Below, in pieces: positions 17,350 through 17,414 of a stretch of DNA of 45,323 nt (within the stretch, counting starts at the first letter, position 1; each line of letters starts with the position of its first letter). Under the pieces are notes generated by a model. That model was not told where the DNA came from and made no database searches. It saw only the letters and a program-made list of their open reading frames with translations. This DNA comes from Octopus bimaculoides (Eukaryota). The DNA is taken from positions 5,979,634 through 6,024,956 of the forward strand of contig NC_068982.1 in assembly GCF_001194135.2 (NCBI RefSeq), written 5' to 3'. The translations under genes and the position numbers were made by a program.

Positions 17350-17414
17350 CGACCTCCCCATACCGATCGGTCAGTTTCGACTCATTCCGTAGCCTCATCA
17401 GTAGGGACCGTTCG
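17350..17414 (-). ncRNA. Canonical type I hammerhead ribozyme
   Basis: RNA 5'-CGA ACGG UCCCUA CUGAUGA GGCU ACGGAAUG AGUC GAA ACUGA CCGA UCGGU A^UGGGGA GG UCG-3'. All core nucleotides are present. Helix I 6+3 bp with an internal loop, helix II 4 bp, helix III 5 bp. GUA triplet, predicted cut between 17361 and 17360. Confidence 0.85.

What the first reader, a model, noticed from the sequence alone, without database searches (positions are those of the whole stretch)
17350..17414. Intact canonical hammerhead ribozyme with no adjacent recognisable retroelement ORF
Seen: complete CUGAUGA/GAAA/GUA core, three pairable helices with G·U pairs that preserve structure, and an extended helix I with an ACGG/GG internal loop opposite an 8-nt loop II. 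Known: fast natural type I hammerheads use a helix I bulge to loop II contact; minimal PLE motifs lack it. Inference: this is the best candidate for an active monomeric self-cleaving RNA here, either a retrozyme-like/PLE terminus of a new family or a domesticated intronic ribozyme. Helix III also contains the palindrome ACCGAUCGGU, allowing an alternative or dimeric fold.
Basis: partly seen in the sequence, partly recalled or inferred. Interest (0 to 1): 0.85.

Follow-up and report, generated by a model that had tools for sequence, protein, structure and literature searches.

The report
Solitary hammerhead ribozyme motif in octopus DNA
A complete, textbook-looking type I hammerhead self-cleaving RNA motif really is encoded here on the minus strand of an octopus genome, but it is a lone copy that is broken and fast-evolving at the matching locus of Octopus sinensis, so it is most likely an ordinary decaying leftover of a ribozyme-carrying mobile element, not a new or domesticated ribozyme.

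Summary
The motif is real. On the minus strand, 17414..17350 holds an intact hammerhead core (CUGAUGA, GAAA, A15.1-U16.1, GUA|U) and three helices of 6 (+3), 4 and 5 bp. Motifs of this quality are expected about 1e-4 times per window by chance.

It is the only hammerhead in the 45 kb. It is not in tandem and has no second copy in about 130 kb of octopus DNA examined. It does not reach any Rfam hammerhead threshold.

The window is an Octopus genome. The collinear, most likely orthologous, O. sinensis locus carries the same sequence with 12/65 differences, against 13/169 in the flanks. One difference is C11.1->G, which breaks the conserved G10.1-C11.1 pair. Helix I is shortened there and its extension is lost. 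That locus is intergenic in the NCBI annotation.

The nearest RT is a 5'-truncated APE-type LINE whose paralogues end 2.5 kb away without the motif. No PLE (GIY-YIG) ORF is present. Thermodynamically a register-shifted 11-bp helix that sequesters the core outcompetes the hammerhead fold.

Best reading: a solitary relic of a type I hammerhead from a retrozyme- or PLE-like element, possibly still cleavable in vitro, with no evidence of host function. It is a new member of a known kind and of low interest.

The parts
17350..17414 (-). Complete type I hammerhead motif (helix I open-ended). Predicted self-cleavage after A17361, before U17360.
   Evidence: Read directly. Pairs enumerated. Only descriptor hit in the window.
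17395..17401 (-). Core box C3-U4-G5-A6-U7-G8-A9 (CUGAUGA)
17375..17378 (-). Core G12-A13-A14 plus A15.1 (GAAA)
17379..17394 (-). Helix II (4 bp: G-C, G.U, C-G, U-A) closed by the 8-nt loop ACGGAAUG (17390-17383). C11.1 = 17379.
   Evidence: C17379 is G in O. sinensis.
17361..17375 (-). Helix III (5 bp, A15.1-U16.1 to A-U) with CCGA tetraloop, then the cleavage-site nucleotide A17 (17361). Contains the palindrome ACCGAUCGGU (17371-17362).
17402..17414 (-). Helix I 5' strand (17407-17402), ACGG side of the internal loop (17411-17408), and 3-bp extension (17414-17412)
   Evidence: Not conserved in O. sinensis.
17350..17360 (-). Helix I 3' strand (17360-17355), GG side of the internal loop (17354-17353), and extension (17352-17350)
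   Evidence: Extension lost in O. sinensis.
17096..17499 (-). 404-bp stretch carrying the motif. It is single-copy within the window and bounded by a (TCA)n/(ACT)n microsatellite (16965-17095) and a 299-bp palindrome (17500-17798). GC 0.41, CpG observed/expected 1.18. Its true element boundaries are unknown.

Best explanation
This is a solitary, no-longer-constrained copy of a type I hammerhead ribozyme. It was most likely left behind by a hammerhead-bearing mobile element: a monomer or fragment of a non-LTR retrozyme or a related PLE-derived sequence. The insertion predates the split between the window's Octopus species and O. sinensis.

If the minus strand is transcribed, the RNA can form the three-way junction. 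G12 (17378) would then activate the 2'-OH of A17 (17361). The products would be an upstream fragment ending in a 2',3'-cyclic phosphate and a downstream fragment starting with 5'-OH U17360. With only one copy there is nothing to excise or circularise, so the only effect would be to cut whatever transcript runs through it.

Shown here: the motif, its uniqueness in the window, homology with O. sinensis, and lack of conservation. Inferred: origin from a mobile element, and residual cleavage competence.
For: - Motif complete and far better than chance for a 45-kb window.
- The window is an Octopus genome. L001 (O. sinensis CM016860.1:33245284-33265910) is collinear with window 14.4-32 kb.
- The homologous motif in L001 has 12/65 differences against 13/169 in the flanks (Fisher p = 0.03). 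These include C11.1->G and loss of helix I pair 2.6-1.6 and of the extension. It gives no hammerhead hit in Rfam even at E<=10.
- No gene range overlaps L001 apart from an RT fragment, so the locus is intergenic.
- There is no tandem array or second copy.
- Five CpGs of the window's motif are non-CpG in O. sinensis and none the reverse. This points to an intact ancestral motif that decayed in O. sinensis.
- Literature: type I hammerheads are abundant in metazoan genomes as retrozyme repeats, with dispersed monomers (PMC7229834; bioRxiv 10.64898/2026.07.22.740005). 235 Hammerhead_1 hits were reported in the giant squid genome (PMC6962438).
Against: - No other family member could be found, so descent from a mobile element is inferred, not shown.
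- The 404-nt unit is not unusually structured (z = -1.1), and no target-site duplication or element ends were identified.
- A 5-bp helix III and an 8-nt loop II are not typical of the described invertebrate retrozyme or PLE hammerheads (PMC7229834, PMC6155905), and Rfam models do not recognise the motif.
- A few motifs of this quality are expected by chance per octopus-sized genome.
Confidence: 0.6

Rival explanations
1. Chance motif. The sequence never was a ribozyme. A hammerhead-like arrangement arose by drift in unconstrained intergenic DNA.
For: - Extrapolating, a few motifs of this quality are expected per ~2.5-Gb genome.
- No paralogue was found.
- Rfam hammerhead models are not reached.
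- The hammerhead fold is not the thermodynamically preferred one.
- There is no conservation.
Against: - The expected number in one 45-kb window is about 1e-4, unless the window was chosen for the motif.
- The patch is CpG-rich (observed/expected 1.41 against 0.83 for the window) and stands out from its AT-rich surroundings.
- Real hammerhead-derived copies outnumber chance ones in cephalopod genomes (235 Rfam hits in giant squid, PMC6962438).
Confidence: 0.2
2. Lineage-specific functional ribozyme. The motif is kept intact by selection in the window's species, for example to process an unannotated non-coding transcript, and was lost in O. sinensis.
For: - The motif is perfectly intact in the window.
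- All 6 species-specific CpGs in the motif-containing alignment block are on the window side, against 59:78 elsewhere (binomial p about 0.006 before correction for 11 blocks).
- The helix I 6 bp + internal loop and helix II 4 bp + loop geometry is compatible with a loop-loop contact.
Against: - There are only two lineages and no outgroup, so changes cannot be apportioned.
- The peripheral elements invoked for fast cleavage are exactly the ones that differ.
- The locus is intergenic in O. sinensis.
- A competing 11-bp helix sequesters the core. Helix III pair probability is 0.002 in the 65-mer.
Confidence: 0.1
3. 3' or terminal part of an identifiable autonomous retroelement in the window: a PLE pseudo-LTR, or the 3' UTR of the LINE whose RT lies upstream on the same strand.
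For: - An RT ORF (21160-20321, minus strand) lies 2.9 kb upstream on the same strand.
- The unit abuts a trinucleotide microsatellite, as SINE/LINE 3' tails in this window do.
Against: - Three paralogous LINE copies (L002, L003, L004) stop aligning at about window 19913 and lack the hammerhead unit.
- The LINE is APE-type (Exo_endo_phos_2 + RVT_1 in L002), not PLE.
- None of 94 ORFs >=75 aa has a GIY-YIG domain.
- PLE hammerheads are minimal and lack helix III (PMC6155905).
Confidence: 0.05

Closest known systems
Canonical type I hammerhead ribozymes of metazoan non-LTR retrozymes (Schistosoma Sm-alpha, newt satellite 2, coral / mussel / axolotl retrozymes; Rfam RF00163 Hammerhead_1)
   Same: - Topology: helix I open, helices II and III capped.
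- Identical catalytic core and GUA cleavage triplet.
- Helix II of 4 bp, and helix I of 6 bp followed by an internal loop.
- AT-rich host sequence (GC 0.41) of retrozyme-monomer size (about 400 bp between flanking repeats).
   Different: - Single copy, not in a tandem array.
- No family members found.
- Longer helix III (5 bp against 1-2 bp) and a larger loop II (8 nt).
- Below Rfam thresholds.
- The surrounding RNA is not unusually structured.
- Not conserved at the homologous O. sinensis locus.
Minimal hammerheads in pseudo-LTRs of Penelope-like elements
   Same: - Type I topology.
- Metazoan retroelement context is plausible.
- PLEs show an insertion bias for microsatellites (PMC8557442), and this unit abuts one.
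   Different: - PLE motifs lack helix III and peripheral loops and act as dimers (PMC6155905). This motif has a stable helix III.
- No RT/GIY-YIG ORF or pLTR arrangement is present in the window.
Conserved intronic hammerheads of amniotes (HH9, HH10; RF02275, RF02277)
   Same: Solitary rather than tandem type I motifs in an animal genome.
   Different: Those are intronic and strongly conserved across species. This one is intergenic in the O. sinensis annotation and diverges faster than its flanks.

Membership tests
Hammerhead ribozyme (type I) | Conserved core C3 U4 G5 A6 N7 G8 A9 / G12 A13 A14 / A15.1-U16.1 / H17 | tested here: met
   All positions canonical at 17401-17395, 17378-17375, 17362 and 17361.
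Hammerhead ribozyme (type I) | Three helices around the core, with helix I open and G10.1-C11.1 closing helix II | tested here: met
   6 (+3), 4 and 5 bp. G17394-C17379 closes helix II.
Hammerhead ribozyme (type I) | Reaches the curated Rfam covariance-model threshold (RF00163 / clan CL00010) | tested here: not met
   No hammerhead at gathering in the window. The best clan hit is RF00008 at 25.7 bits against 48.5, with helices mis-assigned.
Hammerhead ribozyme (type I) | Helices maintained (covariation) in homologues | tested here: not met
   The O. sinensis homologue has G10.1.G11.1 and A.A at pair 2.6-1.6, and the extension is lost. Only the G.U->A-U change in helix III is compatible.
Hammerhead ribozyme (type I) | Helix I - loop II tertiary contact | tested here: inconclusive
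   Helix lengths are compatible. The loop nucleotides differ between the two species.
Hammerhead ribozyme (type I) | Site-specific self-cleavage | not testable with these tools
   The nearest-neighbour model ranks the hammerhead fold at -12.4 to -13.2 kcal/mol, below a competitor at -16.2 kcal/mol. Tertiary energy is not modelled.
Metazoan non-LTR retrozyme | Tandem repeats of 150-450 bp, each with one type I hammerhead | tested here: not met
   No tandem repeat covers 17096-17499. There is one hammerhead in 45 kb and none in L001-L004.
Metazoan non-LTR retrozyme | Multi-copy family in the genome | tested here: inconclusive
   No paralogue was found in about 130 kb of Octopus DNA or in metagenome and viral collections. 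Whole octopod genomes could not be searched.
Metazoan non-LTR retrozyme | Expressed as a circular RNA | not testable with these tools
   No expression data are available. A single hammerhead cannot release a unit.
Penelope-like element | RT plus GIY-YIG endonuclease ORF flanked by pLTRs with minimal hammerheads | tested here: not met
   No GIY-YIG in 94 ORFs. The only RT belongs to an APE-type LINE. The hammerhead is not of the minimal type.
Domesticated intronic hammerhead (HH9/HH10-like) | Intronic position and sequence conservation across species | tested here: not met
   The L001 region has no overlapping gene range apart from an RT fragment. Divergence is 18.5% in the motif against 7.7% in the flanks.

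The most novel reading that the evidence does not exclude
The window's species has kept an intact, cleavage-competent hammerhead of an undescribed octopod variant (5-bp helix III, 8-nt loop II, 4/2 internal loop in helix I). Either lineage-specific selection acts on a non-coding transcript, or it is a recent descendant of a still-unknown cephalopod retrozyme family whose tandem sources lie elsewhere in the genome. The 6:0 CpG retention asymmetry would be the first trace of that constraint.
Probability: 0.12. Interest if true: 0.45.

Novelty: new member of a known kind. Interest (0 to 1): 0.2.

Why it matters
If the ordinary reading is right, this adds one more dispersed hammerhead relic to the thousands known in animal genomes. 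It is a useful case of an intact-looking motif that Rfam thresholds miss and that comparative data show to be unconstrained.

It would matter more only in two cases. Genome-wide searches might reveal an octopod-specific retrozyme family with this unusual helix III / loop II architecture. Alternatively, an outgroup might show selective retention in one lineage.

Tried and rejected
1. ORF trick. I translated the 82-aa ORF that runs through the motif and searched the 5.8-billion protein collection and the exact-sequence index, to catch copies in other assemblies. Nothing was found.
2. Exact or IUPAC pattern scans for the 5' and 3' halves of the motif gave 0 hits: two in JGI metagenome contigs and one in IMG/VR.
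3. Hypothesis that the hammerhead sits in the 3' UTR of the upstream LINE: rejected. Paralogous LINE copies end at about 19913 and lack it.
4. PLE hypothesis: rejected. There is no GIY-YIG domain, and the LINE has an APE-type endonuclease.
5. Retrozyme-like compact fold of the 404-nt unit: not seen. The z-score is -1.1 on the minus strand and -1.05 on the plus strand.
6. tRNA-derived SINE head: no tRNA was found.
7. Paralogous RT genes P0022 (O. bimaculoides, L003) and P0027 (O. vulgaris, L004) were fetched in the hope of further orthologous loci. They are paralogous LINE copies only, so no outgroup was obtained.
8. Double-hammerhead via the palindrome: the loop CCGA is not self-complementary in the catalytic register. 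The palindrome instead favours alternative pairings.

Full report
**Observation.** Reading both strands shows the motif on the minus strand from 17414 down to 17350:

CGAACGGUCCCUA-CUGAUGA-GGCU(ACGGAAUG)AGUC-GAAA-CUGA(CCGA)UCGGU-A|UGGGGAGGUCG

- Every core position is canonical (C3-A9 at 17401-17395; G12-A15.1 at 17378-17375; U16.1 at 17362; A17 at 17361).
- Enumerating the pairs gives helix I of 6 bp with a 3-bp extension beyond an ACGG/GG internal loop. Helix II has 4 bp with an 8-nt loop, and helix III has 5 bp with a CCGA loop.
- Each helix contains one G.U pair.
- The palindrome ACCGAUCGGU is at 17371-17362.

**Chance.**
- My descriptor scan finds this as the only hammerhead in the window on either strand, even when helices of 3/2/2 bp are allowed.
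- The loose string CTGATGA...GAAA is no rarer than chance: 2 found against 0.98 expected.
- In 40 Mb of simulated sequence with the window's dinucleotide statistics, the full descriptor gave 53 hits at 3/2/2, 4 at 4/3/3 and 0 at 6/4/4.
- Extrapolating with a pairing probability of about 0.385 per extra base pair gives roughly 1e-4 expected per window. It also gives a handful per octopus-sized genome.
- The motif is therefore very unlikely to be a coincidence for a randomly drawn window, but chance cannot be dismissed genome-wide.

**Curated models.**
- Rfam at gathering thresholds finds only a 5S rRNA in the window.
- A permissive local scan gives one hammerhead-clan hit: Hammerhead_3 at 25.7 bits (cut-off 48.5), E = 0.002 for a 361-nt search. 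It has the helices mis-assigned because the model has the wrong permutation.
- Any Hammerhead_1 score must be lower still.

**Folding.**
- The unconstrained MFE of the 85-nt and 65-nt contexts is not the hammerhead.
- The hammerhead secondary structure is worth -12.4 to -13.2 kcal/mol. A competitor is worth -16.2 kcal/mol.
- In that competitor, 17407-17397 (including CUGAU of the core) pairs in a shifted register with 17356-17367 (including the cleavage site).
- In the 65-mer, helix II and helix III pair probabilities are about 0.1 and 0.002.
- Nearest-neighbour models ignore the core's tertiary energy, so this does not exclude activity. It does argue against a robust fast monomer.
- The 404-nt unit between the flanking repeats is not unusually structured: z = -1.1 on the minus strand and -1.05 on the plus strand.

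**Context.**
- The window is microsatellite- and SINE-rich eukaryotic DNA with many N gaps.
- The motif lies in a 404-bp stretch that is single-copy within the window. That stretch is bounded by a (TCA)n/(ACT)n microsatellite at 16965-17095 and a 299-bp near-perfect palindrome at 17500-17798.
- No tandem repeat includes it.
- The only protein domain found among 94 ORFs of >=75 aa is RVT_1. It belongs to a frameshifted RT at about 21723-19984 on the minus strand.

**Identity of the genome and homologous locus.**
- The RT's best matches are Octopus sinensis, O. bimaculoides and O. vulgaris proteins.
- Fetching the DNA around the O. sinensis hit P0002 gave L001 (CM016860.1:33245284-33265910).
- L001 is collinear, in reverse orientation, with window 14.4-32 kb at 80-92% identity. 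It differs by indels and one internal inversion.
- This is most likely the orthologous locus of a different Octopus species. An old segmental duplicate cannot be formally excluded, but the inference below is the same either way.
- Three other RT loci (L002, L003, L004) are paralogous LINE copies. Their similarity to the window ends at about 19913 and they contain nothing like the hammerhead unit.
- L002 shows Exo_endo_phos_2 upstream of RVT_1, which makes this an APE-type LINE and not a Penelope-like element.
- The hammerhead therefore does not belong to the neighbouring RT.

**Comparison of the two hammerhead copies.** Across the 65 nt there are 12 differences (18.5%), against 13 in the 169 flanking aligned positions (7.7%; Fisher p = 0.03). 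In O. sinensis:
- C11.1 is G, so the conserved G10.1-C11.1 pair is lost.
- U2.6 is A, so helix I falls to 5 bp.
- The 3-bp extension and both sides of the internal loop are changed.
- Two loop II positions differ.
- G16.3 is A, which turns G.U into A-U. This is the only structure-compatible change.

The O. sinensis copy produces no hammerhead hit in Rfam even at E<=10. No gene range other than the RT fragment overlaps L001, so the region is intergenic in the NCBI annotation. The motif is therefore not under purifying selection across these two lineages.

**Direction of change.**
- Five CpGs of the window's motif are non-CpG in O. sinensis, and none the other way round.
- For the whole motif-containing alignment block the count is 6:0. 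The rest of the alignment gives 59 window-only against 78 O. sinensis-only.
- CpG loss is far commoner than gain. This suggests that the common ancestor had the intact motif and that O. sinensis decayed.
- The asymmetry is nominally significant (p about 0.006 before correcting for 11 blocks). It is the only hint that the window lineage might have retained the motif non-randomly. Without an outgroup it cannot be interpreted further.

**Search for relatives.**
- No paralogue was found in the window or in 85 kb of other Octopus loci.
- Nothing was found in the protein collection via the ORF that spans the motif.
- Metagenome and viral contig scans gave no hits.
- Whole octopod genomes were not searchable with these tools.

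**Known biology.**
- Type I hammerheads are widespread in animal genomes. Most sit in short tandem repeats of 150-450 bp that act as non-LTR retrozymes and yield circular RNAs (PMC7229834).
- Dispersed monomers are common, and the retrozymes appear to derive from PLE pseudo-LTRs (bioRxiv 10.64898/2026.07.22.740005).
- PLE hammerheads are minimal and lack helix III (PMC6155905).
- The giant squid genome paper reports 235 Hammerhead_1 hits (PMC6962438).
- No paper in the held library describes octopus hammerheads specifically.

**Conclusion.**
- The best-supported explanation (confidence about 0.6) is a solitary relic of a hammerhead-bearing mobile element. It is older than the split of the two Octopus lineages, unconstrained, and still intact in the window's species. 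It is therefore plausibly cleavable in vitro, but there is no evidence of a host role.
- Rivals are a chance motif (0.2), lineage-specific function (0.1) and membership of an identifiable autonomous element in the window (0.05, largely refuted).
- It is a new member of a known kind. Interest is low.

Noticed in passing
window 13751-13869 (-), context 13620-13960: A full-length 5S rRNA (RF00001, 95 bits) is preceded by poly-A/(TAA)n and by a partial duplicate of its own 5' end across a 10-N gap. It is followed directly by the octopus tRNA-like SINE body, the same family as 7144-7476 and 19170-19333. No 5S was detected in the collinear O. sinensis locus. It looks like a lineage-specific 5S retro-copy or 5S-SINE chimera, or an assembly artefact.
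   Followed up: partly
window 17500-17798: A 299-bp near-perfect palindrome, with arms up to 100% complementary and ends TAATAATATC.../...GATATTATTA with possible TA/TWA duplication. It is a MITE/foldback-like element and lies 86 nt upstream (minus sense) of the hammerhead. It is also present at the O. sinensis locus, where the neighbouring 17762-18596 segment is inverted.
   Followed up: partly
window 17433-17475 (+): A mini hairpin with an 8-bp terminal stem (10 bp in O. sinensis), an AUGAUGA C-box-like element and a CUGA D-box-like element, giving a k-turn / C/D-snoRNA-like arrangement. It is only 43 nt long. It gives weak sub-threshold Rfam snoRNA hits of 14-18 bits.
   Followed up: no
window 17266-17533 vs L001 14987-15259: CpG asymmetry: 6 window-only CpGs against 0 O. 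sinensis-only in the hammerhead-containing block, compared with 59 against 78 over the rest of the orthologous alignment. The hammerhead patch has CpG observed/expected 1.41 against 0.83 for the window.
   Followed up: partly
L001 15260-16647 (between window 17246 and 17266): O. sinensis carries a 1.39-kb AT-rich insertion about 100 nt downstream of the hammerhead. The insertion itself contains a long inverted repeat. It is absent from the window.
   Followed up: no
window 19170-19333 and >15 other sites (e.g. 2906-3070, 9901-10062, 15086-15250, 24785-24947, 36053-36217): A roughly 165-bp SINE family is present in many copies at 75-90% identity. Copies are typically followed by trinucleotide microsatellite tails such as (TTG)n, (TGA)n and (TAA)n. 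This explains much of the window's microsatellite load.
   Followed up: partly
window 39580-40800 (+): A 385-aa ORF with a weak zf-CCHC zinc-knuckle hit (E = 0.0016). It is probably a gag-like fragment of another retroelement, unrelated to the hammerhead.
   Followed up: no
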